The notes beneath the pieces are model-generated. The model did no database searches and had not been told where the DNA came from. It worked only from the letters and a program-made list of their open reading frames with translations. Shown piece after piece: positions 2,417 to 56,951 of a stretch of DNA of 64,000 nt; the first letter of the stretch is position 1; each line of letters begins with the position of its first letter. Location: positions 233,105-297,104 of the IMG/VR virus record IMGVR_UViG_3300025141_000016. One strand, 5' to 3'. Made by a program: the position numbers and the translations under genes.

Positions 2417-2431
2417 CGGTACTCATGCTAT
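2417..2431 (+). promoter_or_regulatory. Class I (late-type) motif, variant
   Basis: CGGTAC-tcatg-CTAT, before ATG 2461. Confidence 0.6.
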
Positions 2432-2460
2432 GGGCACACGAGAATGAGAGAGCACCGCCT

Positions 2461-3474
2461 ATGTCCGAACTTCACCTGTATGACTTCGACGGAACACTGT
2501 TCCGAAGTCCCCATGAGCCTGCGGTGTGGGATGGTCAGTGGTGGAACGACGTGCGCTCCCTGATCCCCCCGTGTGTCCCACAGAAGCCGGGGGCTGATTG
2601 GTGGGTCAACCAAACTGTCAGCAGTGCCAAGCAGTCGATCTCCGACCCAGACGTGTTTGCCATGATGATCACAGGGAGGAATGCAAACTCGGGTCTTCGG
2701 TTCCGGGTGCCAGAACTCCTCAAACAGCGAGGGCTCAACTTCGATGAGGTCCATCTGACCCCCGTTAGCAGCACCCTGGGGTACAAGAAGAAGCTGCTGG
2801 GGAATACGTTGGGGCGGTATCCCCTCATCGACACCGTGCGGATGTGGGACGACAGACCCTCACACCTCCGAGCCTTCGCGCAGGTTGCGGAGAAGATGGG
2901 GATTGACCCCGAAAACATCCATGCCACCCAGGTCCGGGCCAAGTCCAAAGACCCCGAGTGCGAAGAAGACAGCCCAGCAGGGGGTGGTTTCCTGTCAGAC
3001 CCCCCTCCAATCGGAGACGTGTGCCGATATGTAGGGGTTTTTCTTGATGCTTCTTCCAAGGCAGCCCTGTCACATGCGTTCCCTTTTGCCCACAACAAGA
3101 TCAAGAACGACCATGTGACCCTCTGCCTTGGCCCCGCTCTTGGGGGAAACATAGCGGAGGGTGCCCTCGATCTCCTGGGAACGAAGGTACGCATGAAGGT
3201 GATTGGCTACGCCGAGGATGAGGATGGGCAAGCAGTAGTGGTTTCTGTTCCCCCCGGACTCATCTCGGACGCTTCCAGAATCCCTCATGTCACCTTGTCC
3301 ATCTCGGACTCGGTGCAGTCCAAGTACAGCAACACTCTCCTCCGCAAAGGGTGGGAGCGTGTTCGCGGCCCCGCCATCAGTGGGGTGATTGATATGTTTC
3401 CGCGCTCCATGCGAAGGCAAGCAAGTGCAGTTCGGGTAGCCTTCCTGCATTCTCGCTTGGGCCGTAGCGGGTAG
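2461..3474 (+). CDS. HAD-family (Swiss-army-knife type) phosphatase fused to 2H phosphoesterase; RNA end-healing enzyme; C-terminal tag B
   Basis: YDFDGTLF..ITGR..WDDR (HAD) and two HVTL motifs (2H). Start moved to ATG 2461, 30 nt after a class I motif. Confidence 0.8.
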   Translation: MSELHLYDFDGTLFRSPHEPAVWDGQWWNDVRSLIPPCVPQKPGADWWVNQTVSSAKQSISDPDVFAMMITGRNANSGLRFRVPELLKQRGLNFDEVHLTPVSSTLGYKKKLLGNTLGRYPLIDTVRMWDDRPSHLRAFAQVAEKMGIDPENIHATQVRAKSKDPECEEDSPAGGGFLSDPPPIGDVCRYVGVFLDASSKAALSHAFPFAHNKIKNDHVTLCLGPALGGNIAEGALDLLGTKVRMKVIGYAEDEDGQAVVVSVPPGLISDASRIPHVTLSISDSVQSKYSNTLLRKGWERVRGPAISGVIDMFPRSMRRQASAVRVAFLHSRLGRSG

Positions 3475-3483
3475 CCTCTCTAT
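3469..3483 (+). promoter_or_regulatory. Class I motif
   Basis: GGGTAG-cctct-CTAT, before 3513. Confidence 0.7.
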
Positions 3484-3512
3484 CAAGGCTCCCACCGTAG
3501 AGGTATTCGTTT

Positions 3513-4838
3513 ATGGCCCATGACGACGATGCAAAGAAAACCAGTGAGACTCCGTTTTCTCTGACGCAGAACCCCGCTCCGAACCCTGTGACGGGGTTGG
3601 CGTACAAGACCCAGAAACGGGATCTTGTAGAGAAGATCCTGGCGACGTTCCGGTCTGTGCTGCCGAGCAACTATGTCGCACAGGTCAATGGCCCCTGGTA
3701 CTCGTTGCAGTTTCAGGCGATGGCCGAGCAGTTGGCCGAGATCCAAATCTTGGGGACCGAGGTCTACAAAGACTCTGATTGGGACTTCACGCGCACAGAC
3801 TTCTTGTGGCAAGTGCTGGGGTCACTCGTTTTTCCAGGGGCGACTGACCGCTCGGGCATCCCGGCCATCGACGGGGACACCGCCTATCGGCAGTTCCTAC
3901 ATAAGATGGTGTTGTTTCTGTTGGACGGAGCCACCAAAGCCAGCCTGGAAAGAGGGTTAGAGGCCCTTGATCCCGATGTGGTGGCCACCATCACCGAGAG
4001 GTATCTGGAGTCCCCCCCTCGTGATGAAGATGGGGCCTTCACCATTGATGACCAGTTCGTCATCGACGTTTTCATCGAGGGGGCAGCACCCAACACCTTC
4101 CCTGCTGACCCCTTCGTTCTCCAGCAGAACGCGGAACTGGTGCTGGCAGCCTTGAAGCCAGCGCACGTCATCTATTCGTACTCCTACTTGTTCCGCGATG
4201 CCTTCGACAAGATCGCGGATGACAGTGGGGGCCTTTCCCTTGATCTCGACTCCTATTACTACGCCGACCTGCGGAAGTGGTGTCTGGGTGCCCAGCGCAT
4301 CACCGGATCCGGGGACACCCTCACCAACCGGATGCACTTTTCGGACCCCACCAAGTCCTTCCAGAACGTCCGGGCTGGGGCAATCCTCACCTTATCCGCT
4401 GGTGCTAACAAGGGTCGCTATCGGGTGGTGTCAAAGAGGGTTCTCCTGGGGGGCATCGACCCAACATCAGTGACCTACACCCTCTCCACGTCCCTTGTTC
4501 TCACAGGGACTCTGACCGCTCCTGGCGTGGATACGGTGACATTGAGCGCGGCCCCTGATTGGAGCCTCATCCCAGTGGACACCACCATCACCATTGGAAG
4601 TGGGATCAACGCTGGGACGTATCGCTTGGACACAGTGCTGGGGCCAACGGGAGGACCAGTGGGAACTGTTGGGATCAGTGGCGCACAGGTGCGCCTGTCC
4701 CCCAGCATCCTTCAGGTGGAACGCCGAATGTTGAGCACGTTGAATGCTCAAGCCTATGAGGTCGGTGTGGATCGACTCGGGGTACAACTCCCCCACGTTG
4801 TTGCTGGTGAGAACGTCTCCACCCAGTTCCTTTTGTGA
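3513..4838 (+). CDS. Probable baseplate wedge / tail-formation protein
   Basis: DTAYRQFL..GATKASLE..ALKPAHV pattern typical of baseplate protein I-like proteins; beta-rich C-terminus; class I promoter. Confidence 0.6.
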   Translation: MAHDDDAKKTSETPFSLTQNPAPNPVTGLAYKTQKRDLVEKILATFRSVLPSNYVAQVNGPWYSLQFQAMAEQLAEIQILGTEVYKDSDWDFTRTDFLWQVLGSLVFPGATDRSGIPAIDGDTAYRQFLHKMVLFLLDGATKASLERGLEALDPDVVATITERYLESPPRDEDGAFTIDDQFVIDVFIEGAAPNTFPADPFVLQQNAELVLAALKPAHVIYSYSYLFRDAFDKIADDSGGLSLDLDSYYYADLRKWCLGAQRITGSGDTLTNRMHFSDPTKSFQNVRAGAILTLSAGANKGRYRVVSKRVLLGGIDPTSVTYTLSTSLVLTGTLTAPGVDTVTLSAAPDWSLIPVDTTITIGSGINAGTYRLDTVLGPTGGPVGTVGISGAQVRLSPSILQVERRMLSTLNAQAYEVGVDRLGVQLPHVVAGENVSTQFLL

Positions 4839-5673: not shown

Positions 5674-5688
5674 CGGTAAGTCCTCTAT
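5674..5688 (+). promoter_or_regulatory. Class I motif
   Basis: CGGTAA-gtcct-CTAT, before 5720. Confidence 0.75.
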
Positions 5689-5719
5689 TGATTGGTGTGG
5701 CGTAGAGGAGACTTCTCGT

Positions 5720-11071: not shown

Positions 11072-11719
11072 GGTGAACCTCCTTTACAGGAGGGGACGAT
11101 AGACGATCTACGGAACGAAGGCGCAGTTGGACCCGGACAGCGAGTCCGTGATCGGAAAAGCGGAGTGGGATGGATAGGTGTAGGTGTATGGGTGGTGTTG
11201 CTACTACTACGGGAAGGAGTCTTTTGATGAAGGATCGGAGGATCATTATTGAGTGTCTGATTTATTTTGAATCGGTCAACCTAACGGTTTCCCTCTCCTA
11301 AACAGAGTCTATTGAGTCTGTCGTCCCCCTCCTGCGCCAGTGAGGGGGTAGAGGATGCCGAAGGTGAAGGATCCGATTTCCGAGCAGCACGCCTTTTGAC
11401 TCCCTCTCTCCTTTCCCGAGGTGAGAGGGGTGGTGTCAAAAGGGCCGAGCGAAGACTGATCCCGAGAACCCGTCCCCTTTACAGGGGGGTGGGTCAACCC
11501 TTGAAGTTCCGAATGGGAAAGAGCGAGCAAGCGGGGGTGTTCCTTACCCCTCGGGTTTCCCCGATCAAACAACCCAAAGATTCAGTCAAGCACCGATCTG
11601 GCGACCGGCCTAAATGTCCCGTGAGTTTCTGACACCCCCTCCGAAGAGGGGGACTTACCGGGTAGGGTCTACTCGGATCGGGGGGTCTTCGCAACCCCCC
11701 TTCTCCGGGGAGGGGCGCT

Positions 11720-12031: not shown

Positions 12032-12046
12032 CGGTAGGAGCCCTAT
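12032..12046 (+). promoter_or_regulatory. Class I motif
   Basis: CGGTAG-gagcc-CTAT, before 12075. Confidence 0.75.
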
Positions 12047-12074: not shown

Positions 12075-13097
12075 GTGAATCACCCGGACCCCAAACGAGT
12101 TGCTATCGCTGTGTCTCCGCAGCATCAGGCGGCTCGGGTAGCGGCTCGCTACGCCTCCTCCCCTCTGATAAAGGAGTTGGAGGAAGACTACCATTCCCTC
12201 TGGCATGACAAGCATGAAAGGGAGGACGGAAAGCCTCGGCTGTGCCCACTGAAAGCTGGGGTGCCCGATTGTGAGAAGATGACCCTCAAAGAGTTCGTTG
12301 CCAAGTGGAAGAGGCACGGGCTGAAGGCGGTAAAGGTCCAACGGCTTCCTACCACCTACTCCTACTATGACTGTGGGAGCCACGCCACGCTGCGGACGGA
12401 ACAGATCCATGGCAGCCGACTTTACCCCCAAGGCGACATCACGGTTGACTTGAACACCCCCATTCCTTGGAGCAAGGCGAAGAAAGGCGACTGGGTTCAA
12501 TGGCCATGGCACCACGGAGTGGTGATTGATCCCAAGCGCAAGATTGTGGAGAGTTGTTGGGGGGTAGACGGATGGGTGTTTCAACACCCCGTAGACCTTT
12601 CTACTTATGGGGCGAAGCCTACGGTTCATTCCGTGCATCCAAAAGAGAAGACCAAGACCGCCAGTTCTGATGGTCAGTGTATCGTCGGAGGCCAGTGCTT
12701 CCGCTACGCTGTCATGTGGGATGGCAAAGGCCCAGGATCATCCCCTGACGACATTGTTGTTCACGGGAACGTGCATGGCTTGGTCGGTCCTCACGCCTGG
12801 GTCGAGCGGAAGGACGGTCGCGTATTTGACTGGCAGACGGTTGAGGGGATCTGGGAGACGCTTGGCCGTCAACCTGACCCCAGCTACACCAAGCGCGGCT
12901 GGCCGAAGCGTGAGTTCTACGCGGAGTTCAAGCCGCGCAAGATGAAGCGGTACACCGCCGAAGACGCGCTGATCAACGGGATACGGAACCGGCACTACGG
13001 TCCCTGGGACGCGGATGAGGAGTACCGTCCTCCAATCCGATCAGCATCGCGGGTTGCCGCTCGCTACTTGATGGCTTCTCGGCGGCAACGCCGGTAG
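12075..13097 (+). CDS. Tag-B polyprotein: NlpC/P60-papain-like domain + transglutaminase-like domain
   Basis: YDC..HHGVV..ESCWG..HP..YG domain; KTAS linker; QCFRYA..HAWVE..FDWQ domain; tag B at both ends. Start GTG 12075 after AGGAG. Confidence 0.7.
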   Translation: MNHPDPKRVAIAVSPQHQAARVAARYASSPLIKELEEDYHSLWHDKHEREDGKPRLCPLKAGVPDCEKMTLKEFVAKWKRHGLKAVKVQRLPTTYSYYDCGSHATLRTEQIHGSRLYPQGDITVDLNTPIPWSKAKKGDWVQWPWHHGVVIDPKRKIVESCWGVDGWVFQHPVDLSTYGAKPTVHSVHPKEKTKTASSDGQCIVGGQCFRYAVMWDGKGPGSSPDDIVVHGNVHGLVGPHAWVERKDGRVFDWQTVEGIWETLGRQPDPSYTKRGWPKREFYAEFKPRKMKRYTAEDALINGIRNRHYGPWDADEEYRPPIRSASRVAARYLMASRRQRR

Positions 13098-13106
13098 CTT
13101 CTTTAT
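13092..13106 (+). promoter_or_regulatory. Class I motif, variant
   Basis: CGGTAG-cttct-TTAT, before 13140. Confidence 0.65.
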
Positions 13107-15521: not shown

Positions 15522-15536
15522 CGGTAGGTCGTCTAT
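15522..15536 (+). promoter_or_regulatory. Class I motif
   Basis: CGGTAG-gtcgt-CTAT, before 15581. Confidence 0.75.
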
Positions 15537-15580
15537 CTGGGTAGTGGGGGTAGAAGAGAAGTCCCTTTGGAGAGATCCCC

Positions 15581-17438: not shown

Positions 17439-17650
17439 AACGCCTGCCTCCTCCCGATGAGGAGCAGCCGCTCTCCGCGCAGTTCGCAGGCAACTTTCAG
17501 AGGGCGTTCACGTTTACCTTCGTGCTGACCGTTACGACGCTCGCTGTGCTCGGGGTCGTTTTCGTCCGGGCGGCACGGCGATTGCGTCTCCAGAAAGAGC
17601 GAGGGAAGAACATCATCGACGTAGAGGTAGTGGAAGTGGACCCTCAATAG
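17435..17650 (+). CDS. Small single-pass membrane protein
   Basis: GTGA overlap with the upstream stop; hydrophobic segment followed by basic residues. Confidence 0.55.
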   Translation: MKRLPPPDEEQPLSAQFAGNFQRAFTFTFVLTVTTLAVLGVVFVRAARRLRLQKERGKNIIDVEVVEVDPQ

Positions 17651-17659
17651 GTCGCCTAT
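17645..17659 (+). promoter_or_regulatory. Class I motif, variant
   Basis: CAATAG-gtcgc-CTAT, before 17687. Confidence 0.6.
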
Positions 17660-17686
17660 CGGCAGCGCCCCGGTAGGAGAACAAGC

Positions 17687-33305: not shown

Positions 33306-33320
33306 AGGTAATCAGTCTAT
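33306..33320 (+). promoter_or_regulatory. Class I motif
   Basis: AGGTAA-tcagt-CTAT, before 33365. Confidence 0.7.
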
Positions 33321-33364
33321 TGGATGACCTATGGGTGTAGAGGCCCCCATAGGAAGACGCGACG

Positions 33365-33772
33365 ATGACTGATGCCCTGATTTCCCAACTATTCGACTTT
33401 GGCAGTCTCGGGCTGTTTGCTGCGTTCCTTGTCTATCAGCATCTCGGGATGCAGAGGCGGCTCGATGGGCTGACCTCTGGTTTCCAGGCCCAGTTGAAAG
33501 AGATCGAGAAAGCCCATGAGGGTCGTATCGAGATCATGCGTGGTCGATATGATGTGGTGATGGATCGGGTGAGGGCAGAGGGGGCGGCGGCTCTCCAGCA
33601 CTGTATGGCCCAGCGAGATGAACTCATCGCCAAACTCGGGGAGCAGGTTGATGGGGTCGCCAAGAAGATGGATGCCTCGATGTTCAAGCAAGAGGTGGCC
33701 CTCGCAAAGATCGAGGAGGCATTGGACGAGATTCGGCGCGAGCGGGAGCGGCGTTGCTTCAGAGATCGGTAG
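33365..33772 (+). CDS. Holin-like membrane protein (N-terminal TM + coiled coil)
   Basis: FGSLGLFAAFLVY TM segment, then coiled coil; class I promoter. Confidence 0.5.
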   Translation: MTDALISQLFDFGSLGLFAAFLVYQHLGMQRRLDGLTSGFQAQLKEIEKAHEGRIEIMRGRYDVVMDRVRAEGAAALQHCMAQRDELIAKLGEQVDGVAKKMDASMFKQEVALAKIEEALDEIRRERERRCFRDR

Positions 33773-33781
33773 TTCCCCTAT
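33767..33781 (+). promoter_or_regulatory. Class I motif
   Basis: CGGTAG-ttccc-CTAT, before 33819. Confidence 0.75.
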
Positions 33782-33818
33782 GCACCAGAGAGGGTAAGTA
33801 CCCCCGTGGAGATTTCGC

Positions 33819-35057: not shown

Positions 35058-35061
35058 CAGG

Positions 35062-35088
35062 GGGGTCTGACCCCAGCCCGAATGGGTA
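35062..35088 (+). promoter_or_regulatory. Class II motif
   Basis: GGGGT-N17-GGGTA, before the primase. Confidence 0.7.
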
Positions 35089-35097
35089 GGCCCCTCC

Positions 35098-36724: not shown

Positions 36725-38126
36725 TACCAAGTATCGGCCCCGGACCTATGGGGATGTGCTGGGCCAGGATGCCACCGTGGCTGTCCTTCGCCAGTTCGTG
36801 AAGGAGGGAAGGGGGCTTCACCAGTCCTACGTCTTCTGTGGGCAGCACGGATCGGGGAAGACAACCCTCGGTCGTCTTCTTGCTCGGTCGTTGCTGTGTG
36901 AGGCTCCGGTTGAGGGGGCCTCTTGCGACTCCTGTGGGTCGTGCCGGGTGCTTCTCGATGGGGGCACCCACGAGTGTTTTGAGGAACTGGATGCGGCTAC
37001 GAAGTCGGGGAAGGCAGACCTCGCCCGAATCGTTGAAGACGTGACCTACTCCACCTATTCGGGAAAGCGCAGGATCTACCTTTTCGATGAGTCCCATCGC
37101 CTGTCCAAACAGGCCCTCGACGTGCTCTTGAAGCCGATGGAGGACAACGTGTTGGGGTCAGAGGAAAAGCGGCTCGTGTGCATCTTCTGTACCACCGAGC
37201 CAGCCAAGATGGCGAGCACCATCTTCTCGCGCTGTGCCCCGGCCTTCGTGATCCGCCCCGCACCTCTCCCCGAGATTGTGGAACGGTTGACCCATGTTTG
37301 TGGGCAGGAAGGGATTGAGTACGAAGGGGATGCTCTCACTCTCCTCGTGGAGCAGAGTGAGAGCCATATCCGAGATGCCTTGAAGATGGTCGAGGGGGTT
37401 TCGATGCTCGGGGGCATCACCCGGACTAATGCAGCAGCTTACTTGCATCTGGAGGCGAACGAGGAGGTTCTGGGGCTTCTGGAGGCCCTTGGGTCGGACC
37501 TCAACCGTGTGGTGAGCGTTGCCACCTCACTCTCCGAGAGGATGAGCCCGTCGGGGGCCTATGAGCGAGTAGCGGAAGCAGCGATGCTTGTCTACCGGGT
37601 TTACTTGGGGGTTGCCTCAATCCCTACCAAGTGGGATGGTGGTCGGGTGAAGGCCCTGGCAGAGTCGGGGCCGTCTCTTCTCACCGTCGCTTCCCGTTTT
37701 GCTGCCCCACCCCACCGTCCTACGCGGCAGACCTTGATCCTTGACTCGGTTGCCTCCCATCACCTCTACGGGTCCGATGTGGGGGTTTCTGTCGGAGCCC
37801 AGATCGTTGTATCTGCCCCCGCGCCCCCCGTTGCTGCTCCCCCCACCCCCCCACTTGTTTCGGGGGCTTGCTCGGCACTTTCGGAAGGCTCGTCTCCTGA
37901 CCTTGATCCTGTGGGTAATGTCGGTCATGGATCAGACACGCCAACAGCATCAACAACCGCCAACGGGATATGGGTGGACTCCCGAGCGGTGGGTCATGGC
38001 CCTGTTTCGCGGACTGACAAGTCCCAACCCACATCCGATAAAGAATCTCTCTCGTCACCTGTTTTTCGTGAACTGGTACGTCACCATCTCCGAAGGATGA
38101 TGGGTGACCATGGACGTTCGGGATGA
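36714..38126 (+). CDS. dnaX: DNA polymerase III gamma/tau clamp-loader ATPase
   Basis: KYRP..DVLGQ, GQHGSGKTT, C-x-CxxCxxC, ELDAA, FDESH, CTTE, SRC, RDAL. Confidence 0.93.
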   Translation: MALDTKYRPRTYGDVLGQDATVAVLRQFVKEGRGLHQSYVFCGQHGSGKTTLGRLLARSLLCEAPVEGASCDSCGSCRVLLDGGTHECFEELDAATKSGKADLARIVEDVTYSTYSGKRRIYLFDESHRLSKQALDVLLKPMEDNVLGSEEKRLVCIFCTTEPAKMASTIFSRCAPAFVIRPAPLPEIVERLTHVCGQEGIEYEGDALTLLVEQSESHIRDALKMVEGVSMLGGITRTNAAAYLHLEANEEVLGLLEALGSDLNRVVSVATSLSERMSPSGAYERVAEAAMLVYRVYLGVASIPTKWDGGRVKALAESGPSLLTVASRFAAPPHRPTRQTLILDSVASHHLYGSDVGVSVGAQIVVSAPAPPVAAPPTPPLVSGACSALSEGSSPDLDPVGNVGHGSDTPTASTTANGIWVDSRAVGHGPVSRTDKSQPTSDKESLSSPVFRELVRHHLRRMMGDHGRSG

Positions 38127-38652
38127 AATCACATGGGCAGTTTTGGAACTCTCTCCACACGGAGAGCGAGTAGCCGAGGCGGGTCTGTTGGAGGAGATCC
38201 TTCGTGACTACTCCGACATGCCGGAGGGGCATCCGGTTTTCGTCCCTTATCTCACCCTCACTTACAGTGGAACGCAGTCACTCTTCTCGGTAATGGAGGG
38301 GTACGCCTTCGTGGGTTCTGGGCTTCCAGATCACTCCTACCGAGGTTTACTCAACACCCCTTATGTGCGGGGACTCCTATCGAGGGGAGGGAATGGGCAG
38401 TCGTGGGTTTTGGACACGGTGCCGGACGCATCTGTGCGCGAACTGCGCCAACGGTTGAATGAACTCGTAGCCGTTGAGATACAAGTGGATATGAAAGTTA
38501 CGGTCATTGAGGGCTCTTACTCGGGCCTGGAGGGTAAGGTAGTCAGCGTTGGGCCAAAACATGCGATGGTTTTGGTCGAGCTTCGCTCCCTACGGGCGCT
38601 GAAAAAGATGCCGCGCTTCATCCTTCGCCCCTGGGAAGAACCTAATGAGTAA
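38110..38652 (+). CDS. NusG/RfaH-like transcription elongation factor
   Basis: NGN-like (VFVP..MEGYAFV) plus KOW (VTVIEGSYSGLEGKV). Confidence 0.75.
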   Translation: MDVRDEITWAVLELSPHGERVAEAGLLEEILRDYSDMPEGHPVFVPYLTLTYSGTQSLFSVMEGYAFVGSGLPDHSYRGLLNTPYVRGLLSRGGNGQSWVLDTVPDASVRELRQRLNELVAVEIQVDMKVTVIEGSYSGLEGKVVSVGPKHAMVLVELRSLRALKKMPRFILRPWEEPNE

Positions 38653-39253
38653 CTATTGGTGCAGTCATATCGTTCTGGATCCCTCCGACATGGAGAGGAT
38701 TTTTTCAACCGAGGACACCCTCTCCAACTACCCCAGCATCTCCGAGGAGATGTCGGATGAAAGCAAGGAGGAGTTAGACCAAGTGAAGGGGGTTCTGGAG
38801 CAGATCCCCCCGCGTGAGGCTGACTTCGTGGAGTTGTACTTCTTTCAGAAACTCCGGCAGACCACCATTGCGGAGATGTTCAACATCAGCCAGCCGACGG
38901 TGTGCTACCGACTTCAACGAGCCGCAGCCAGGATCCGCTATCTCATCGACATGCCGACTTACAACGTCTGGCTGATGGAGCAGGATCTCCGAGGGGTGCT
39001 CACTGATCCCCGAGACATTGAGATCATGTTGGGGATGGTTGAGACAACCTGTCAGTCGGAAGTGGCGAAGCGGATGGGGGTGACACAGGGTTTTGTGCGG
39101 CACCGCTTCTTCCGCACTATCGACCGCCTGAAGAAGATGAGCGGCATGGATACCTATGTGCAGGTGTACGAACATGTGGCCGGGAACCTCAACATCCTCA
39201 AAGAGACACAGCGATCTCAATGGTCCGAGCCGGTGATCTACGTCGTGAACTGA
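38645..39253 (+). CDS. Sigma-70 region 4-like double-HTH protein
   Basis: IPPREADFVELYF..QTTIAEMFNISQPTV..RLQRA; second HTH QSEVAKRMGVTQGFV. Confidence 0.7.
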   Translation: MSNYWCSHIVLDPSDMERIFSTEDTLSNYPSISEEMSDESKEELDQVKGVLEQIPPREADFVELYFFQKLRQTTIAEMFNISQPTVCYRLQRAAARIRYLIDMPTYNVWLMEQDLRGVLTDPRDIEIMLGMVETTCQSEVAKRMGVTQGFVRHRFFRTIDRLKKMSGMDTYVQVYEHVAGNLNILKETQRSQWSEPVIYVVN

Positions 39254-39259: not shown

Positions 39260-39274
39260 CGGTAGTGCGTCTAT
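39260..39274 (+). promoter_or_regulatory. Class I motif
   Basis: CGGTAG-tgcgt-CTAT, before 39310. Confidence 0.75.
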
Positions 39275-40060: not shown

Positions 40061-40075
40061 CGGTAGCTCCTCTAT
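40061..40075 (+). promoter_or_regulatory. Class I motif
   Basis: CGGTAG-ctcct-CTAT, before 40107. Confidence 0.75.
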
Positions 40076-43386: not shown

Positions 43387-43401
43387 CGGTAGGCCGCCTA
43401 T
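43387..43401 (+). promoter_or_regulatory. Class I motif
   Basis: CGGTAG-gccgc-CTAT, before 43448. Confidence 0.75.
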
Positions 43402-43447
43402 GAGCCAACCCCGGTAGGGTATCCTGACCCCTCCCGTCGGAGGACGC

Positions 43448-44677
43448 TTGTACGCAAATCTTACCGAGGCTTTGAAACGCCGTATGATCCAAGAGATCAG
43501 GTACTTGTGGTCGAAAGACCCGAAGTACCGGGACTCCTTGGTGCCTAACATCCAGGGGCGGTTCTCATTTCGGGAGCGCCCCCAGGAAGCCATCATCCTG
43601 AAAAGCCAGAGTGCGAGCCCCTTTCAACTGGCGGCAGATCACTTTCAGGGCACCATCATCGCGTACTGCTTCCTGACCAAAGTGTATGGGCAGAATGGAA
43701 CGAGCATCGAGTGGGTGCGTGAGAACGGTGCTGCGATCCGTGCCAATAACGGGGTCTTCCCGTCTCCCCCTGGGGTCTACTACATCGAGGTCCGCGAAGA
43801 GGTCATCACCTATCGGGGCGAGCAGACGGAAAGGCTTGTCTTCTATGTGGACCCGTTGCTGGATGTGATTGACGAGACGGCGACGATGCTTGGCCCTCGT
43901 CTATATGAGGTCGGCGCAGGGGCTTTCCACCCCGGAAGCCTTCAAGTCTACGAGATGCCGGGAAACATTCTCTTGTATGAGGGGGTCAACTACACGGCGG
44001 ATGCCACCACAGGGCAAATCACTTTGGCGGCCCCCCTCCCTTCCAACACGTCAATGTCGGTGGATTACCGCTACGCCGGGACCAGCACTGGCCCGTTCCC
44101 CCTCCCCGAGAACGGCGCTGATGTGGATGCTATCCCCGGAGTGGTTCTCGCCTTTGGGCGCAGGGCCTATGACGGGGACATTATGGCGGTGGTTGTCACG
44201 GAACGACGGGAAGATGTGGCCAAGGAGTTCGGCGGCAGGTGGGAGATGAGCATGGACATGGACATTATGGCCCGTGACGTGTACGCCCAAGGGGAGATCA
44301 CTGACCGCACCCTCATGTACCTCCACACGGAGGCACGGGAGAGGCTTTCCACCGAGGGAATCGAGATCACGTCCGTCAGCATGGGTGGTGAGGCCGAAGA
44401 AATCTACGACGAGAATGGCGACGATTACTTCTACACGGCTTCCCTATCGTTGAGCGTTATGACTGACTGGGCCATCCACGTTCCGCTCGGGAGGACCGTG
44501 ATGCGCGTGATCCCCGCCACTGTCGGACAGGAGAAGATGGCGGCAGGCTTGGACGACGCACAACTGATCGAGATGGGGTCACCTACGCGCCTCATCGCCA
44601 CAGACAACTTGGGCCTCGTGTCGATCTCGGACCCGTGGTTCCGTGATCGCACCCGCAACTACGAGGTCATTCGGTAG
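43448..44677 (+). CDS. Probable neck / tail-completion protein
   Basis: Class I promoter; DATTGQITL..VDYRY beta module also seen in the sheath. Confidence 0.5.
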   Translation: MYANLTEALKRRMIQEIRYLWSKDPKYRDSLVPNIQGRFSFRERPQEAIILKSQSASPFQLAADHFQGTIIAYCFLTKVYGQNGTSIEWVRENGAAIRANNGVFPSPPGVYYIEVREEVITYRGEQTERLVFYVDPLLDVIDETATMLGPRLYEVGAGAFHPGSLQVYEMPGNILLYEGVNYTADATTGQITLAAPLPSNTSMSVDYRYAGTSTGPFPLPENGADVDAIPGVVLAFGRRAYDGDIMAVVVTERREDVAKEFGGRWEMSMDMDIMARDVYAQGEITDRTLMYLHTEARERLSTEGIEITSVSMGGEAEEIYDENGDDYFYTASLSLSVMTDWAIHVPLGRTVMRVIPATVGQEKMAAGLDDAQLIEMGSPTRLIATDNLGLVSISDPWFRDRTRNYEVIR

Positions 44678-44686
44678 CAATCCTAT
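44672..44686 (+). promoter_or_regulatory. Class I motif
   Basis: CGGTAG-caatc-CTAT, before 44719. Confidence 0.75.
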
Positions 44687-44718
44687 GCGGAAGCCTCGAT
44701 AAAAGAAGAGAGAACCAG

Positions 44719-46623: not shown

Positions 46624-46638
46624 CGGTAAGTCTCCTAT
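46624..46638 (+). promoter_or_regulatory. Class I motif
   Basis: CGGTAA-gtctc-CTAT, before 46680. Confidence 0.75.
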
Positions 46639-46679: not shown

Positions 46680-47000
46680 ATGACTGAACCTACTCGCCGG
46701 ATGCTGATCCGATTTGCGTCCACCCTTCCTGTGGGATCAGACGAACGTCGGACCATCCTCGCTGGACTGGACAAGCAGGGTTCCGTGGAGTCCTTTGAGA
46801 AGGAACTCGCCATACAGTTACGTTTGCATACGGGCTTGGGTCCAAAGGATCAGATGGGCCTGAAGGGTCGCACCGTGTGGCTTGCCGATGGAAAGGGTGA
46901 GGTACTGATCTACGATACGACTGCCCGTGGGACGGTGCTCAACTACAAGGGCAAGGAATACAAGTCGGTAAGGGACTTGATGAAGTCCCTTTCTCGGTAG
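46680..47000 (+). CDS. Small tag-A protein
   Basis: LIRFASTLPVGSDERRTILAGL, then KQGS. Confidence 0.75.
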   Translation: MTEPTRRMLIRFASTLPVGSDERRTILAGLDKQGSVESFEKELAIQLRLHTGLGPKDQMGLKGRTVWLADGKGEVLIYDTTARGTVLNYKGKEYKSVRDLMKSLSR

Positions 47001-47009
47001 GCCGCCTAT
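46995..47009 (+). promoter_or_regulatory. Class I motif
   Basis: CGGTAG-gccgc-CTAT, before the sheath gene at 47117. Confidence 0.75.
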
Positions 47010-52625: not shown

Positions 52626-52666
52626 CCGAGTGCCCCTTCCCGTAAGTGTCGGGAAGGGGCTCTCGG
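52626..52666 (+). terminator. GC-rich stem-loop after the sheath gene
   Basis: CCGAG-T-GCCCCTTCCCG / CGGGAAGGGGC-T-CTCGG; no U-tract. Confidence 0.55.
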
Positions 52667-52678
52667 TAGGTCGCCTAT
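52664..52678 (+). promoter_or_regulatory. Class I motif
   Basis: CGGTAG-gtcgc-CTAT, before 52720. Confidence 0.75.
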
Positions 52679-54150: not shown

Positions 54151-55403
54151 TGGCTCGACGTACTGCCAAGGCTGATGTGACCCCGGTTCGACAGCGGACC
54201 CAGTACACCTGCATGAGCACCTCCCTGATGATGTGCCTCCAGGCCCTTGGGTACGACGTTGACGAGGATGAGGTCAACAAGGTCATGGGCGCACGTCCCA
54301 TGAAGGGTGCAGCGTGGGAGCAGGCTCTTGCCGCTGCCCAGCACTTCGGAGTCCGAGGAACACTCGTGACCCCTTCGACTGTGCGGCAGTTGAAGGAATG
54401 GACCGACGCGGGCAAGCCCGTGATGATCGCCTGGAATCCCGAGGGTCGAGAGTGGTCACACGCCAGCGTCGTCTTCGACGTGACCCCGTGCAAGGAACAT
54501 GGGTTCGACGTTCATGTCGCTGACCCCAACATCCCTGACCCCGACGAGACAGTCCGGGTCATGCCCAAGTCCGAGTTCTACAAGAAGTGGTACGAGAAGT
54601 GGCCGAACTACTTGGTTCGCCGTCCCGCTCTCATGCTGGACCGGGAGATCACTCCTGATGGTCGTCAGGTGATGGCCTTCAAGAAAGCATCCTCTCGTGG
54701 CTGGGAGAAAACCATCGCTTCTTGGAGCAAGGAGTACAAGACCCCAGAGGGGAAGGTTTTAGGGACCGTGGTTATCGACCGGGGCAAGGTCAACTGGAGG
54801 CCGAACCAGTTGATTGAGGGTTTCGTTCGTCCGCAGGTCATCAGTCGTTCCCGAAGTGGGGAAGAAATCCCCAGTAACGAGAAACTGACCTCTGTGGCAG
54901 ATGCCTGGGTGCGGAAGAACCATGGGAGACAAGTCATGGCTTCCGGTTCCGCTGACCCCAGCCGGGTGGCGGCCAGATATGCCTCGCGCTGTGCCAGTGG
55001 GGATAAAGCCCTCTGGGCGGGTCGGCGCAAGCCCACTTCCGGGGAAGTGGAATGGGCGAAGAATGCCAAGTGGCAGGATTGGGAGCCGCACCCACTCCCC
55101 GATGACCTCACCAAGTTTTTCAAGCGCACCCCAGATACGATTGAGGTGGGTCTTTCCGAGATCACCCCAATCCGGGCTCGGGAGAAAGGCATCGCTAACG
55201 CCAACCGATTCATGTGGTTGGCGTACTGGGGGAAGATGCCCCGGCGAAAGCCCATTTCGTTGAGAGAAAACGATGACGGCACCTACACCATCCTTGATGG
55301 GAACTCGACCTATGCCAACGCCAAGATGAGTGGGTGGAGACACATGTGGGGTCGAGTTGAAGAGTCCCCCTCTACAACGCGGCTATCGCGGAGGATCCCA
55401 TGA
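54150..55403 (+). CDS. Tag-B polyprotein: C39-like peptidase + unknown + ParB/Srx-like domain
   Basis: RQRTQYTC..SHASVV..VADP; KPI..YTILDGNSTY..GW; ADPSRVAARY. Confidence 0.72.
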   Translation: MARRTAKADVTPVRQRTQYTCMSTSLMMCLQALGYDVDEDEVNKVMGARPMKGAAWEQALAAAQHFGVRGTLVTPSTVRQLKEWTDAGKPVMIAWNPEGREWSHASVVFDVTPCKEHGFDVHVADPNIPDPDETVRVMPKSEFYKKWYEKWPNYLVRRPALMLDREITPDGRQVMAFKKASSRGWEKTIASWSKEYKTPEGKVLGTVVIDRGKVNWRPNQLIEGFVRPQVISRSRSGEEIPSNEKLTSVADAWVRKNHGRQVMASGSADPSRVAARYASRCASGDKALWAGRRKPTSGEVEWAKNAKWQDWEPHPLPDDLTKFFKRTPDTIEVGLSEITPIRAREKGIANANRFMWLAYWGKMPRRKPISLRENDDGTYTILDGNSTYANAKMSGWRHMWGRVEESPSTTRLSRRIP

Positions 55404-56911
55404 ACTTTACTGCCTCTACCTTACGTCTTGCGTCCCTGCGGGTTGCCTTTCACCACCTCAATGCTGAATGGCACCGCATCGCGAAGCCCAAATACTTGAA
55501 GACGCTTGATTGGATGCTGGGGTTGATCCGGTCCTTCGACAAGGACGGCTACCAGATTTCTGCCGACCTCTCCAATAGGAACATGCTGCGCCGGGTCATT
55601 CGTATGAGGCAAGCGGTTCAGGATGGGTTCGATCTTGCCCTGCTCATCGAAAATGACGAGATCATGGAGGGGGCTGGAGCCAAGGCTATGGGGCGGCTCC
55701 AGAAAGCTGTGAAGGAGCAGGCTCAACTCCAGCCCACCGATACCGATCTTGCTGCGTTTGTGAAGACCTACGCAGACAAGGAGGACGGTGCGCGGCGTAC
55801 CCAAGGGGAGTTTTTCAAGAAGCTGATTGCCAAAGAACTGGAACTTGGGAAAGAGGAAGTCGCCAACATGGATACGCTCGTGATGAGCGACAGGCCATTC
55901 TTTGATGCGTGCTTCAATGTCGTCAACCAGTACGTCAATGCACGGAAGAACAGGGTGGCTTCAGCCCTGTCGTCGGCTCCCGGTGAGTTCAAGATGCGGG
56001 ACAAGGCAAACACCTCAACGTGGAACAAGAGTCGGAGGGGGAAGAAACCACGCGCTTTCTACTATCTGGGTGACCTCTTGGGGTGTATGTCCGTCACCAC
56101 TTCTATCCCTGACATGGCTCATGCGTGTGAGGTGGCACAGTCTTCCATCAAGATCATCGCCAAGGACAATAAGTACCTCGATACGCAGGGTGGCTACAAC
56201 GCCGTCCACTACGCGCTCCTCGTTGACAAACTCGTCGTGGAGTATCAGGTGAAGGCGAAGGTGAGTGCCATGGAGGCTGCTATCTCCCATGATCTTGTCC
56301 ATGACGACGACAAGTTCCGGGCGAAGTTCAAGCCTACAACGAGCGCCCCCGAGGGTCGTATCCCTCTGTCTTCCGCCGAGAAAGACATGGTAAAGCGTGT
56401 GATAGACATTTCCACGCAACTCACCATGCGGGACTTTGAGCAGGCGTTTGACCTCGGGCTGATGACAGGGGGGCAGCCTATTGACCCCACCGATCTCCTT
56501 TATGGTGAAGGCTTGTCTCCCGAAGAACTCAAAGAGCGCATCCACATGGCCAGCCTCCGCATGGCTCGGTACTACCGTTTCTGGGAACCCCGGTTCGGTG
56601 GGGCCAAGGTGGGCGGCCATGACCCCTACGAGTTCTACGAGGGGATCTCTCCGCAACACCCGCCCCCAGGTGGCTGGGCGAAGTGGGAGGCCGAGGAGAA
56701 ACGGGAGGCCGAGCGGAAGGAGAAGAAGCTGCACAAGGACGTGGCCCAGTGGATGCGTCGGAACGCGAGGGGCAAGAACATCTACGAACTCATCGACGCA
56801 GCGGTCATGCACTTCGGCCTCCGTCGGCCCGATGGCTATGCCTACGATGGCGGCGAAGGCCCGAGGTGGGTCCACGTCCTGGCCGACAAATACCACAGAC
56901 CCTACGACTGA
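55400..56911 (+). CDS. RelA/SpoT-like nucleotidyltransferase (small alarmone synthetase-like) with tag-B-like leader
   Basis: RDKANTSTWNK (RxKxxxSxxxK), DLLG, GYNAVH, EYQVK, AAISH. Confidence 0.7.
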   Translation: MNFTASTLRLASLRVAFHHLNAEWHRIAKPKYLKTLDWMLGLIRSFDKDGYQISADLSNRNMLRRVIRMRQAVQDGFDLALLIENDEIMEGAGAKAMGRLQKAVKEQAQLQPTDTDLAAFVKTYADKEDGARRTQGEFFKKLIAKELELGKEEVANMDTLVMSDRPFFDACFNVVNQYVNARKNRVASALSSAPGEFKMRDKANTSTWNKSRRGKKPRAFYYLGDLLGCMSVTTSIPDMAHACEVAQSSIKIIAKDNKYLDTQGGYNAVHYALLVDKLVVEYQVKAKVSAMEAAISHDLVHDDDKFRAKFKPTTSAPEGRIPLSSAEKDMVKRVIDISTQLTMRDFEQAFDLGLMTGGQPIDPTDLLYGEGLSPEELKERIHMASLRMARYYRFWEPRFGGAKVGGHDPYEFYEGISPQHPPPGGWAKWEAEEKREAERKEKKLHKDVAQWMRRNARGKNIYELIDAAVMHFGLRRPDGYAYDGGEGPRWVHVLADKYHRPYD

Positions 56912-56936
56912 CTTGAAGACCCCCGTAGGGTTAGGT

Positions 56937-56951
56937 CGGTAGGGAGGCTAT
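56937..56951 (+). promoter_or_regulatory. Class I motif
   Basis: CGGTAG-ggagg-CTAT, before 56977. Confidence 0.75.

What the first reader, a model, noticed from the sequence alone, without database searches (positions are those of the whole stretch)
2417..56951. Conserved late-type promoter motif CGGTAR-N5-CTAT
14 exact GGTAR-N5-CTAT sites plus 5 variants, all on + and upstream of a gene. Most lie about 28-55 nt before a start codon of a structural, lysis or tagged gene (107 nt for the sheath). A rough estimate at about 62% GC gives under one chance hit per window. Several sites have a further RTAR 12-13 nt downstream (after 3483, 5688, 15536, 17659, 33781, 43401, 44686, 56951). In seven cases the TAR doubles as the upstream stop codon, but in the others it does not. 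The 5-nt spacing is unlike sigma-70 -35/-10 or the T4 TATAAATA late promoter.
Basis: partly seen in the sequence, partly recalled or inferred. Interest (0 to 1): 0.8.

Follow-up and report, generated by a model that had tools for sequence, protein, structure and literature searches.

The report
Late-gene promoter motif of a huge marine phage
The repeated GGTAR-N5-CTAT signal is real and is most likely the upstream half of a late-gene promoter in an uncultured 297-kb marine phage; the same signal is kept across a whole clade of related huge phages and starts right after a gene for an unusual double "sigma region 4" DNA-binding protein that may read it.

Summary
The window has 14 exact GGTAR-N5-CTAT copies, all on +, against 0.16 expected. 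The window is the last 64 kb of a 297-kb marine phage contig. Across 157.5 kb of that contig there are 19 exact copies against 0.32 expected. Each lies 25-107 nt upstream of a start codon on its own strand, and the three minus-strand copies precede minus-strand genes. Related phages, whose sigma-4 proteins are 46-81% identical to the window's, keep the motif at matching positions while the flanks diverge.

About half the sites carry a second block, sGTAGAG, at a fixed 11-13 nt after CTAT. The same GGGTAD-type block is the downstream half of a second promoter class, GGGGGGTK-N15-16-GGGTAD, found in front of replication genes. In seven phages that block sits 8-9 nt before a start codon with no ribosome-binding site. 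This fits a -10-like element and would put the 14-bp motif at about -40 to -26, where a -35 element sits.

In 23 relatives the promoter type switches at the gene for a 202-aa tandem sigma-70 region-4 protein: 27/0 middle-type versus 5/42 late-type sites (p = 2e-15). That protein is the leading candidate reader.

No transcript data exist, so start sites, timing and the polymerase are inferred. I rate it a new variant of a known kind.

The parts
3470..3500 (+). Late site: GGTAGCCTCTCTAT (3470-3483) plus downstream block CCGTAG (3495-3500). ATG at 3513 (441 aa, function unknown). The TAG is the stop codon of gene 2461-3474.
5675..5705 (+). Late site: GGTAAGTCCTCTAT plus block GCGTAG (5700-5705). 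ATG at 5720 (125 aa).
12033..12046 (+). Late site: GGTAGGAGCCCTAT. Downstream block is degenerate (GGGTCA). Probable GTG start at 12075 (340 aa); the start codon is uncertain.
15523..15553 (+). Late site: GGTAGGTCGTCTAT plus block GGGTAG (15548-15553). ATG at 15581 (478 aa).
33307..33340 (+). Late site: GGTAATCAGTCTAT plus block GTGTAG (33335-33340, 3 nt further away than usual). ATG at 33365 (135 aa).
33768..33797 (+). Late site: GGTAGTTCCCCTAT plus block GGGTAA (33792-33797). ATG at 33819 (412 aa). The TAG is the upstream stop codon.
39261..39274 (+). Late site: GGTAGTGCGTCTAT, 8 nt after the stop of the tandem sigma-4 gene. ATG at 39310 (106 aa). This site is conserved in nearly all relatives.
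40062..40075 (+). Late site: GGTAGCTCCTCTAT. ATG at 40107 (570 aa). The matching site is exact in relatives whose sigma-4 protein is only 54-57% identical.
43388..43417 (+). Late site: GGTAGGCCGCCTAT plus block CGGTAG (43412-43417). TTG at 43448 (409 aa; the atlas search points to a tail terminator or sheath stabiliser, a lead only). Relatives have cacGGTAGAGTG at the same offset.
44673..44702 (+). Late site: GGTAGCAATCCTAT plus block CGATAA. ATG at 44719 (endolysin with a peptidoglycan-binding domain). The TAG is the upstream stop codon.
46625..46638 (+). Late site: GGTAAGTCTCCTAT. ATG at 46680 (106 aa).
46996..47009 (+). Late site: GGTAGGCCGCCTAT, 107 nt before ATG 47117 of the 1829-aa tail sheath. 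A further GGGTAG lies at 47074. The TAG is the upstream stop codon.
52665..52678 (+). Late site: GGTAGGTCGCCTAT, directly after a strong stem-loop that follows the sheath gene (-30.6 kcal/mol, z = -5.6). ATG at 52720 (476 aa).
56938..56967 (+). Late site: GGTAGGGAGGCTAT plus block GGATAG (56962-56967), 9 nt before ATG 56977 (193 aa). This is the shortest CTAT-to-start distance seen (25 nt).
2418..2431 (+). Variant site: GGTACTCATGCTAT, 29 nt before the called start at 2461 (337 aa, HAD domain of RNA-repair proteins).
13093..13106 (+). Variant site: GGTAGCTTCTTTAT (TTAT, as in many relatives). ATG at 13140 (149 aa).
17646..17676 (+). Variant site: AATAGGTCGCCTAT plus block CGGTAG (17671-17676), 10 nt before ATG 17687 (227 aa).
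11099..11112 (-). Minus-strand variant: CCGTAGATCGTCTAT, 27 nt before the ATG (11071) of minus-strand gene 10535-11071.
38645..39253 (+). Candidate reader: a 202-aa protein with two sigma-70 region-4-like helix-turn-helix repeats (about residues 38-101 and 108-163) and no sigma region 2.
38104..38652 (+). NusG-like protein (weak NGN and KOW matches; PHROG 'transcription antiterminator'). Its gene overlaps the start of the sigma-4 gene.
35060..35089 (+). Comparison class ('middle' promoter): GGGGGGTC-N16-GGGTAG, 8 nt before ATG 35098 of the Toprim gene, with no ribosome-binding site. This fixes the register of the GGGTAD block. Other copies: 19460-19488, 22229-22258, 23584-23613, 26291-26320 and 35822-35851 on +; 10505-10534, 46121-46149 and 60550-60578 on -.

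Best explanation
The 14-bp element cGGTAR-N5-YTAT is the class-specific upstream part of the late promoters of this phage clade. It lies in the short spacer after one gene and before the next, always in the direction of the gene it serves.

About 11-13 nt after it, roughly half the sites carry an sGGTAD/sGTAGAG block. This is the same kind of block that forms the downstream half of a second, 'middle' promoter class, GGGGGGTK-N15-16-GGGTAD, in front of replication genes. It resembles the -10 hexamer of SigB/SigF-type sigma factors.

If transcription starts about 9 nt after that block, the late motif spans roughly -40 to -26. That is where the middle class has its -35-like block.

Inferred, not shown: a bacterial-type RNA polymerase, probably the host's, opens the DNA at the GGTAD block. 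The phage's tandem sigma-region-4 protein, made from the middle operon, supplies late specificity. Its two helix-turn-helix units would read GGTAR and YTAT in successive major grooves, taking the place of the usual -35 contact.

My sub-probabilities: promoter element 0.8; this register 0.55; the tandem sigma-4 protein as reader 0.45.
For: Enrichment and direction:
- There are 14 exact copies in the window (0.16 expected) and 19 in 157.5 kb (0.32 expected).
- All point the same way as the next gene and lie 25-107 nt before its start.
- Three exact minus-strand copies precede minus-strand genes. One pair is back-to-back, 9 nt apart, in a 108-nt divergent spacer where transcripts must begin.
- Of 31 matrix hits, about 28 lie upstream of a gene on the same strand.

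Gene classes: none stands before the helicase, RecA, SbcCD, nuclease, primase, clamp-loader, RNR, TK or methylase genes. They do stand before the sheath, the endolysin, a tail-terminator-like protein and polyvalent proteins.

Conservation: 22 exact copies on + and 0 on - in relatives. The site after the sigma-4 gene is kept as c-G[GT]TA[AG]-N5-YTAT in relatives whose sigma-4 protein is as little as about 46% identical, with unconserved flanks. With a relaxed pattern, 60 sites are on + and 8 on -; 47 of the + sites are followed by an ORF start.

Fixed second block: A at offset 16 in 42 of 62 sites, and GTA peaks at offsets 13-14.

Register:
- The middle class has 11 distinct copies in 157.5 kb. 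The shuffle control, which counts overlapping matches, gave a mean of 1.4 against 21 raw matches observed.
- In the window and six relatives the Toprim ATG lies 8-9 nt after GGGTAD with no ribosome-binding site.
- No confirmed late site has a start codon closer than 9 nt to its own block, or closer than 25 nt to CTAT. One possible exception in a distant relative is listed in the Against line.
- In Streptomyces, SigB-type -10 hexamers are GGGTAT or GGGTAG, with starts 8-10 nt downstream (PMC8346170).

Link to the factor:
- Pfam Sigma70_r4 matches at E = 6e-15 in two stretches, and SigF region 4 is the best PDB match.
- The AlphaFold2 model shows two four-helix repeats, and the top Foldseek matches are sigma-4 domains and ECF sigmas.
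- Both recognition helices are nearly invariant across the clade.
- In 23 relatives, middle-type sites number 27 upstream and 0 downstream of this gene, and late-type sites 5 upstream and 42 downstream (Fisher p = 1.7e-15).
Against: - No RNA run could be listed, so no start site, timing or dependence on any factor is shown.
- About half the late sites lack a clear TA-containing block at the expected offset.
- In this register many late transcripts would start within 0-8 nt of the start codon, which would leave well-placed GGAG/GAGG ribosome-binding sites outside the transcript. That is awkward unless those sites serve read-through transcripts.
- The upstream half-site CGGTAR is indistinguishable from hexamers used as the -10-like block in the middle class. 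It could therefore itself be a -10 element (first rival).
- No sigma region 2 protein or polymerase gene was found in the 157.5 kb examined. What melts the DNA is therefore unknown, and 139.5 kb of the genome remains unseen.
- The second sigma-4 repeat scores just below Pfam's threshold when scanned alone (22.2 bits against 24.1).
- A UvrD-like helicase and an RNA-repair-type HAD protein are also preceded by the motif, so 'late' does not simply mean 'structural'.
- A possible TTG start 23 nt after the motif in distant relative L051, if real, would break the 25-nt lower bound.
Confidence: 0.68

Rival explanations
1. Different register. The cGGTAR half is itself the -10-like hexamer, the same kind as in the middle class. 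Late promoters would then have no -35 element, and the invariant CTAT would sit at or next to the start site, 7-9 nt after the hexamer. The second GGTAG block about 13 nt further on would lie in the early transcript. There it could cause a sigma-dependent promoter-proximal pause, as at lambda PR', which might load the NusG-like or sigma-4 (Q-like) protein.
For: - CGGTAA and CGGTAG serve as the downstream hexamer of several middle-class sites.
- All ribosome-binding sites would lie inside the transcript.
- The sigma-4 protein has weak matches to Q-like antiterminators: PHROG 79 at 8.7e-5 and Pfam Phage_antitermQ at 0.08.
- A NusG-like gene lies next to it.
Against: - In this tightly packed genome, CTAT is never confirmed closer than 25 nt to a start codon. 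If transcription began at CTAT, 12-24 nt would be enough.
- CTAT is conserved as strictly as a protein-binding half-site, which is unusual for a start-site context in sigma-70-family promoters (established knowledge).
- There is no purine preference just after CTAT.
- This model gives no role to a -35-type DNA-binding module.
Confidence: 0.15
2. Not a promoter but a loading site within transcripts, like E. coli ops. The non-template-strand CGGTAG would recruit the phage NusG-like protein to the elongating polymerase, to suppress termination or couple translation at each late gene.
For: - The hexamer CGGTAG equals positions 3-8 of the E. coli ops element GGCGGTAGnnTG (recalled from memory, not tested here).
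- cacGGTAGAGTG upstream of the 409-aa gene in five relatives matches ops positions 3-12.
- A NusG-like gene lies beside the sigma-4 gene.
- The signal is strictly strand-specific.
Against: - The back-to-back divergent pair leaves only about 50 nt for an upstream promoter on either strand, and no other conserved element is there.
- Sites recur every 0.4-4 kb, which recruitment does not need.
- The composite is about 30 bp long with fixed spacing, longer than a transcription bubble.
- The same GGTAD block has promoter-like two-block geometry in the middle class.
- The ops T11 and G12 positions are not conserved after the upstream copy.
Confidence: 0.07
3. A binding site (operator) for some other phage DNA-binding protein, such as a repressor or a nucleoid or packaging factor, that happens to lie between genes and does not itself direct initiation.
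For: TAG-N5-CTA is a short imperfect inverted repeat. Some sites are partly palindromic, for example ATAGGTCGCCTAT at 17646.
Against: - The motif is asymmetric: CGG on one side only, and G rather than A before TAG.
- Its orientation follows gene direction in all 19 exact copies and in 22 more in relatives.
- It keeps a fixed distance to a -10-like block and a minimum distance to start codons.
Confidence: 0.05
4. An RNA-level signal, such as a processing site, a structured leader or a translational coupling signal linked to the stop codon.
For: It always lies on the coding strand, and the TAR is the upstream stop codon at 6 of 17 window sites.
Against: - There is no covariation. Position 4 is A in 3 sites opposite an invariant C10, and positions 5 and 9 pair in only half the sites.
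- There are no Rfam matches.
- At 11 of 17 sites the TAR is not the stop codon.
- The divergent pair cannot be reached by upstream transcripts.
Confidence: 0.03

Closest known systems
SigB/SigF-type (group 3 sigma) promoters, GTTTAA-N12-14-GGG(A/T)A(A/T)
   Same: The downstream block of both phage classes (GGGTAD or sGGTAG) matches the SigB-type -10 hexamer (GGGTAT, GGGTAG, GGTAAG), which has an almost invariant GGG and an A at position 5. Starts lie 8-10 nt downstream (PMC8346170). That fits the 8-9 nt to the Toprim ATG, which has no ribosome-binding site. The best solved-structure match of the first sigma-4 repeat is SigF region 4.
   Different: The -35 part is GGGGGGTK in the middle class and the 14-bp GGTAR-N5-YTAT in the late class, not GTTTAA. 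The sigma that reads the hexamer has not been identified.
T4 middle promoters (MotA box at -30 plus a sigma-70 -10 element; sigma appropriation by MotA and AsiA)
   Same: The logic is the same: a phage-specific duplex element at the -35 position replaces the normal -35 contact while a shared -10-type element is kept, and a phage protein made in the previous phase reads it (PMC2988021 appeared in the search list but was not read; the rest is established knowledge).
   Different: Different sequence and a longer, two-part site. No MotA or AsiA homologue was seen. The candidate reader here is built from sigma region 4 modules.
Sigma-54 promoters, TGGCAC-N5-TTGC (-24/-12)
   Same: Identical 5 + 5 + 4 layout with a leading GG. 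Sigma-54 also reads its two blocks, one helical turn apart, with two DNA-binding modules on one chain (established knowledge).
   Different: The second block is CTAT, not TTGC. The inferred start is about 26 nt, not about 12 nt, after it. No sigma-54 or enhancer-binding-protein domain appears in the gene tables. The candidate protein matches sigma-70 region 4.
T4 late promoters (TATAAATA; gp55, gp33 and the sliding clamp) and 'minimal sigma' factors of jumbo phages that lack their own RNA polymerase
   Same: A short class-specific signal sits before nearly every late gene. The sigma function is split or reduced. The factor gene lies next to a clamp-loader gene. Jumbo phages without a polymerase are reported to carry minimal single-HTH sigmas and gp33-like proteins (PMC7824862).
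   Different: There is no TATAAATA. The factor has two region-4-like units rather than a region-2-like gp55 or a non-DNA-binding gp33.
Promoters of the non-virion RNA polymerases of jumbo phages (AR9 AACA-N6-TW; phiKZ TATG)
   Same: A short two-part, phage-specific consensus in a jumbo phage (papers listed).
   Different: Those lie at -11 to +1 and need phage-encoded split beta/beta' subunits. None was seen in 157.5 kb here. A sigma-70 region-4 homologue points instead to a bacterial-type holoenzyme.
RfaH ops element GGCGGTAGnnTG
   Same: It shares the core CGGTAG, and a NusG-like gene lies nearby.
   Different: See the rival explanation: the layout, the frequency of sites and the divergent pair all argue for initiation sites.

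Membership tests
Sigma-70 housekeeping promoter (-35 TTGACA / -10 TATAAT) | Two hexamers resembling TTGACA and TATAAT, 16-18 bp apart | tested here: not met
   A consensus scan of window 1-20000 found 2 sites against 4.6 expected, and none at a motif site. The motif sequence and its spacing differ.
SigB/SigF-type (group 3) promoter | -10 hexamer GGG(T/A)A(T/A) with the start 8-10 nt downstream | tested here: inconclusive
   An sGGTAD block is present at fixed distance in about half the late sites and in all middle-class sites. The start position is inferred only from the conserved 8-9 nt distance to a start codon that has no ribosome-binding site. Reference consensus from PMC8346170.
SigB/SigF-type (group 3) promoter | -35 element GTTTAA / GNNT, 12-16 bp upstream | tested here: not met
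   Late sites have GGTAR-N5-YTAT at that position, and middle sites have GGGGGGTK.
Sigma-54 (-24/-12) promoter | GG and GC doublets exactly 10 bp apart (TGGCAC-N5-TTGC) | tested here: not met
   The GG is present, but the second block is invariant CTAT with TA in place of GC.
Sigma-54 (-24/-12) promoter | Sigma-54 and an AAA+ enhancer-binding activator are available | tested here: inconclusive
   No Sigma54 or bEBP family appears in the Pfam results for 157.5 kb. Only an AAA_5/VWA pair was seen. The host is unknown.
T4 late promoter | TATAAATA at -10 and gp55/gp33 homologues | tested here: not met
   The motif differs, and no gp55 or gp33 family hit appeared in the Pfam/PHROG scans of window proteins.
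Jumbo-phage non-virion RNA polymerase promoter | Phage-encoded split beta/beta'-like polymerase subunits | tested here: inconclusive
   None is seen in the 157.5 kb covered by Pfam/PHROG results, but 139.5 kb of the contig was not examined, and about 20 kb of the covered part (L073/L075) was scanned only for the motif and ORFs.
RfaH ops site | 12-nt GGCGGTAGnnTG in a transcribed leader downstream of a separate promoter | tested here: not met
   Only CGGTAG is shared. T11 and G12 are not conserved after the upstream copy. The divergent pair leaves no room for separate promoters. The ops consensus is recalled from memory.
Sigma-70 family sigma factor (for protein 38645-39253) | Region 4 helix-turn-helix (-35 recognition, beta-flap binding) | tested here: met
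   Pfam Sigma70_r4 at E = 6e-15 and Sigma70_r4_2 at 7e-10. PDB SigF region 4 at 5e-5. Foldseek TM-score 0.8 against isolated region-4 domains.
Sigma-70 family sigma factor (for protein 38645-39253) | Region 2 (core binding, -10 recognition and DNA melting) | tested here: not met
   There is no Sigma70_r2 hit. The model shows two region-4-like four-helix repeats, one extra helix and disordered ends. So it is not a canonical sigma.

The most novel reading that the evidence does not exclude
A sigma-2-less protein made of two sigma-70 region-4 modules acts as a late 'half-sigma' or -35 adaptor. It would read a 14-bp two-part element (GGTAR-N5-YTAT) with its two helix-turn-helix units. It would thereby redirect a polymerase that still uses a SigB-like GGGTA -10 element from middle (GGGGGGTK) to late promoters. 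This would be a previously undescribed way of switching promoter class, shared by a large clade of uncultured huge phages (more than 1,100 homologues; contigs up to 536 kb). Many late and middle messages would be leaderless or nearly so.
Probability: 0.35. Interest if true: 0.75.

Novelty: new variant of a known kind. Interest (0 to 1): 0.62.

Why it matters
Phage-specific promoter classes are well known. For the huge uncultured phages found in metagenomes, however, almost nothing is known about how their gene expression programme is organised, because they have no hosts in culture.

Sequence alone here gives a two-class promoter grammar, middle GGGGGGTK-N15-16-GGGTAD and late GGTAR-N5-YTAT-N11-13-GGTAG. 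It also gives a conserved switch point and a concrete candidate factor. This has three practical uses:
- It allows operon and timing annotation across a clade with more than a thousand members.
- It predicts leaderless translation of specific genes.
- It offers a small (202-aa), testable DNA-binding protein with a defined 14-bp target. If that protein works as proposed, it would be a new way of building promoter specificity from sigma region-4 modules, and possibly a useful orthogonal part for synthetic biology.

Tried and rejected
- RNA evidence: no RNA run could be listed for 43380-47400. Only marine DNA metagenomes hold the sequence.
- Laying contigs of four DNA runs on 41400-47399 showed strain variants. 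None of the 40 listed variant positions (of 126) falls in the four motif copies, but this is too incomplete to count as evidence.
- No near-identical phage record was found by megablast. The only relative in the phage collection is an unannotated 485-kb uncultured phage, LR745208.1.
- A collection-wide scan for CGGTAGGYCGCCTAT found only the four known copies in this genome plus 22 singletons elsewhere, which are chance hits. It gave no new sites.
- Hairpin or N4-like promoter idea: some spacers allow TAGG-NNN-CCTA, but most do not, and there is no covariation.
- Terminator-plus-promoter modules: only the site after the sheath gene has a significant upstream stem-loop. The general terminator scan showed no enrichment.
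- Rfam and tRNA scans of the window were empty.
- Host inference from genome collections gave only a Verrucomicrobiota MAG contig at 39% identity and a Bacilli MAG fragment, which is not informative.
- The sigma-54-like reading was set aside because of the sequence of the second block and the inferred start distance.
- I first took the A at offset 16 to be the start site, because ribosome-binding sites would then be kept in the transcript. I dropped this after finding the middle class with its conserved geometry lacking a ribosome-binding site and the 25-nt lower bound.
- Two exact-protein look-ups failed because my start codons differed from the called genes.
- A literature search for tandem region-4 phage factors found nothing specific.

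Full report
**What the window is.** The 64-kb window has 59% GC. It is the last 64 kb of IMG/VR contig IMGVR_UViG_3300025141_000016, which is 297,104 bp long. The same phage occurs as a 150-kb contig from a second sample and in ENA and Logan assemblies. It is held by many marine and hydrothermal DNA metagenomes. No near relative exists among deposited phage genomes.

Recognisable genes on the + strand:
- A replication and recombination block at about 19.5-33 kb and 35-38 kb: Dda/RecD-like helicase, RecA, SbcC/SbcD-like proteins, a PD-(D/E)XK nuclease, a Toprim protein and a DnaX-type clamp loader.
- An endolysin at 44719-45543.
- A 1829-aa protein whose C-terminus is a tail sheath, at 47117-52606.

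On the minus strand there is an RNR-like gene at 6601-8631. Most other proteins have no family match.

**The observation.** GGTAR-N5-CTAT occurs 14 times, always on +, against 0.16 expected. The consensus is C-GGTAG-(G)N(C)SY-CTAT. Every copy lies in a short spacer between two + genes, 25-46 nt before the next start codon, or 107 nt for the sheath gene. At six of the 17 exact-plus-variant sites the TAG or TAA also serves as the previous gene's stop codon. Three one-mismatch variants, at 2418, 13093 and 17646, have the same context. A fourth, on the minus strand at 11099-11112, precedes a minus-strand gene.

**Wider genome scan.** I walked leftwards from the window through overlapping loci. This produced a composite of 157,510 bp, contig positions 139,519-297,104.
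- It holds 19 exact copies against 0.32 expected: 16 on + and 3 on -.
- Each minus-strand copy lies 27-41 nt upstream of the start codon of a minus-strand gene.
- Two copies sit back-to-back, 9 nt apart, in a 108-nt spacer between divergent genes. Transcription of both genes must begin in that spacer.
- With a position weight matrix, about 28 of 31 hits lie upstream of a gene on the same strand.
- None stands before the nucleotide-metabolism and small-gene regions, or inside the long operon of giant genes at 139-171 kb.
- Genes preceded by the motif outside the window include a UvrD-like helicase followed by polyvalent ART proteins, and a 1518/1519-aa protein with a ParB-like N-terminal domain.

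**Relatives.** Gene 38645-39253, just upstream of site 39261, encodes a 202-aa protein with a sigma-70 region-4 match (E = 6e-15, two stretches). It has more than 1,100 homologues, many on 100-280-kb contigs. An alignment of them retrieved 29 viral loci whose sigma-4 proteins are 100% to 39% identical to the window's, from contigs up to 536 kb.
- Outside this phage's own contigs, these loci plus L036 carry 22 exact motif copies on the strand of the gene and none on the other strand.
- The site right after the gene's stop codon is kept as c-G[GT]TA[AG]-N5-[CT]TAT in almost all relatives whose sigma-4 protein is at least about 46% identical, while the flanks are not conserved.
- The site before the 570-aa gene is exact in relatives whose sigma-4 protein is only 54-57% identical.

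This conservation shows that the element is functional.

**A second block and a second promoter class.** Aligning 62 non-redundant sites on YTAT shows a sharply placed downstream element. G is enriched at offsets 11-13, T at offsets 14-15, and A stands at offset 16 in 42 of 62 sites with G in 15 more. The consensus is sGTAGAG.

The spacers in front of the replication genes lack the late motif. They carry instead GGGGGGT[CGT]-N15-16-[GC]GGTA[AGT]. There are 11 distinct copies in the composite: 8 on + and 3 on -, and each of those I checked against a gene model points the same way as the next gene. The shuffle control, which counts overlapping matches, gave a mean of 1.4 against 21 raw matches observed. 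A separate scan of the window found one more minus-strand copy, at 46121-46149. This class is conserved at matching places in relatives.

In the window and in six relatives the ATG of the Toprim gene lies 8-9 nt after the GGGTAD hexamer. The protein N-terminus (M-R/K/N-E/Q/D-W-L) is conserved from that ATG, and no ribosome-binding site lies in between. The simplest reading is a two-block promoter whose GGGTAD block acts like a -10 element, with a start about 9 nt later that gives a leaderless message.

The hexamer matches the SigB-type -10 consensus: GGG almost invariant, A at position 5, examples GGGTAT and GGGTAG, and starts 8-10 nt downstream (PMC8346170).

Applying the same register to the late sites puts GGTAR at about -40 to -36 and YTAT at about -30 to -26 (give or take 1-2 nt between sites). 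This overlaps the position of the middle class's GGGGGGTK block, at about -38 to -31. Two further facts fit this register:
- No confirmed late site has its start codon closer than 25 nt to CTAT, or closer than 9 nt to its own hexamer, although the genome is otherwise tightly packed.
- The divergent pair then has its two upstream elements back-to-back and its polymerases facing outwards.

**The candidate reader.**
- The 202-aa protein has two consecutive four-helix, region-4-like repeats at about residues 38-101 and 108-163. After them come one more helix and a disordered but conserved tail (AlphaFold2 model, mean pLDDT 75).
- Foldseek's best matches are ECF sigmas and isolated region-4 domains.
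- The first repeat resembles SigF region 4. The second repeat scanned alone still matches Sigma70_r4 (E = 1e-4, just under the curated cut-off).
- There is no region 2.
- Both putative recognition helices are almost invariant across the clade, in line with the conserved DNA motif.
- The gene is the last of a middle-type operon (clamp loader, NusG-like protein, sigma-4 protein), and late-type sites begin 8 nt after its stop codon.
- Across 23 non-redundant relatives, middle-type sites number 27 upstream and 0 downstream of the gene. Late-type sites number 5 upstream and 42 downstream (Fisher p = 1.7e-15).

A protein with two -35-type DNA-binding units is a natural reader for two conserved blocks one helical turn apart at the -35 position. 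This link is circumstantial.

**What is not shown.** No transcript data could be found. Start sites, timing and factor dependence are therefore all inferred.
- About half of the late sites lack a clear TA-containing block.
- In the preferred register many late messages would have leaders of 0-8 nt, which leaves good GGAG/GAGG sites upstream of the start.
- The upstream half-site CGGTAR looks just like a middle-class -10 hexamer, so a rival register cannot be excluded. In that register CGGTAR is the -10 element, CTAT sits at the start site, and the second block acts as a pause or loading site.
- The neighbouring NusG-like gene and the identity of CGGTAG with the core of the E. coli ops element (from memory) keep an antitermination-loading reading alive. 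The divergent pair, the frequency of sites and the two-block geometry argue against it.
- No sigma region-2 protein and no polymerase gene was seen in the parts of the 157.5 kb that have Pfam or PHROG results. The 139.5 kb not examined may hold them.

**Comparison and novelty.** The element is not a sigma-70 housekeeping promoter, a T4 late promoter, a sigma-54 promoter or a promoter of a jumbo-phage non-virion polymerase. It shares its 5 + 5 + 4 layout with sigma-54 sites. It shares its logic, a phage-specific element replacing the -35 contact above a shared -10-type element, with T4 middle promoters. A literature search found no description of this motif or of a tandem region-4 phage factor. 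I rate it a new variant of a known kind: a phage class-specific promoter with an unusual architecture, a plausible new type of specificity factor, and clade-wide conservation.

Noticed in passing
window 19460-19488, 22229-22258, 23584-23613, 26291-26320, 35060-35089, 35822-35851 (+); 10505-10534, 46121-46149, 60550-60578 (-): A second conserved two-block signal, GGGGGGT[CGT]-N15-16-[GC]GGTA[AGT], lies in front of replication and other non-late genes and points the same way as them. It is conserved in relatives and is probably a 'middle' promoter class with a SigB-like -10 hexamer.
   Followed up: yes
window 35084-35100, and the matching sites in L040, L041, L042, L043, L045 and L048: The ATG of the Toprim (primase-like) gene lies 8-9 nt after the GGGTAD hexamer with no ribosome-binding site, in seven phages. 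This predicts a leaderless message. Genes 19497 and 35858 have the same layout.
   Followed up: partly
window 38645-39253 (+): A 202-aa protein with two sigma-70 region-4-like repeats, no region 2 and a conserved W-x-[ED]-P-V-I-Y C-terminal tail. It has more than 1,100 homologues in metagenomes, on contigs up to 536 kb. JGI names some of them 'sigma24 family'.
   Followed up: yes
window 38104-38652 (+): A NusG-like protein with weak NGN and KOW matches and a PHROG 'transcription antiterminator' hit. Its gene overlaps the start of the sigma-4 gene by 8 nt and follows the clamp-loader gene.
   Followed up: partly
window 60868-61872 (-): A 334-aa protein gives a full-length match to Pfam Volactin (E = 1.7e-76), an actin-like family. 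It lies in a lower-GC (50-53%) minus-strand block at 60-64 kb, so this may be a phage-encoded actin homologue.
   Followed up: no
window 47117-52606 (+): The tail sheath is 1829 aa long. Only the last roughly 350 residues match a sheath family, so about 1,470 residues of unexplained N-terminal extension remain.
   Followed up: no
window 52624-52664 (+): A strong stem-loop (11-bp G+C-rich stem, -30.6 kcal/mol, z = -5.6) lies directly after the sheath gene and just before late site 52665. It has no T-run, so it may be a terminator or an RNA stabiliser.
   Followed up: partly
window 1-2144 (part of a 1247-aa ORF, L004 8180-11923); L068 2326-8219: Large 'polyvalent' proteins carry ART-PolyVal and ParB-like N-terminal domains. 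With a 1193-aa UvrD-like helicase, they lie downstream of late-type sites, which suggests they are packaged into virions.
   Followed up: partly
L073 5744-17200 (contig about 155-166.6 kb): A 3818-aa ORF lies within an operon of very large genes (1344, 818, 218, 3818, 75, 842, 265 and 850 aa). It has no exact late motif and only degenerate variants (CGGTAATGTGGCTGTAT, CGGTAGGTAGTCGAT).
   Followed up: partly
window 42202-43386 (+); 54150-55403 (+); 2461-3474 (+); 46134-46619 (+): Unexpected domains among genes in the late region: a ferritin-like domain (394 aa), a peptidase C39-like domain (417 aa), an RNA-repair-type HAD domain (337 aa) and a Zn-ribbon protein (161 aa).
   Followed up: no
L070 13924-15000; L070 11929-13350: The phage encodes a glutamine synthetase-like protein (Gln-synt_N and Gln-synt_C) and an AcrVA2-like protein, according to the precomputed Pfam tables.
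   Followed up: no
window 46969 (runs X4 and X5): Contigs from other samples diverge from the window after position 46969, near the end of the 106-aa gene and just before late site 46996. This points to strain-level replacement at that junction.
   Followed up: no
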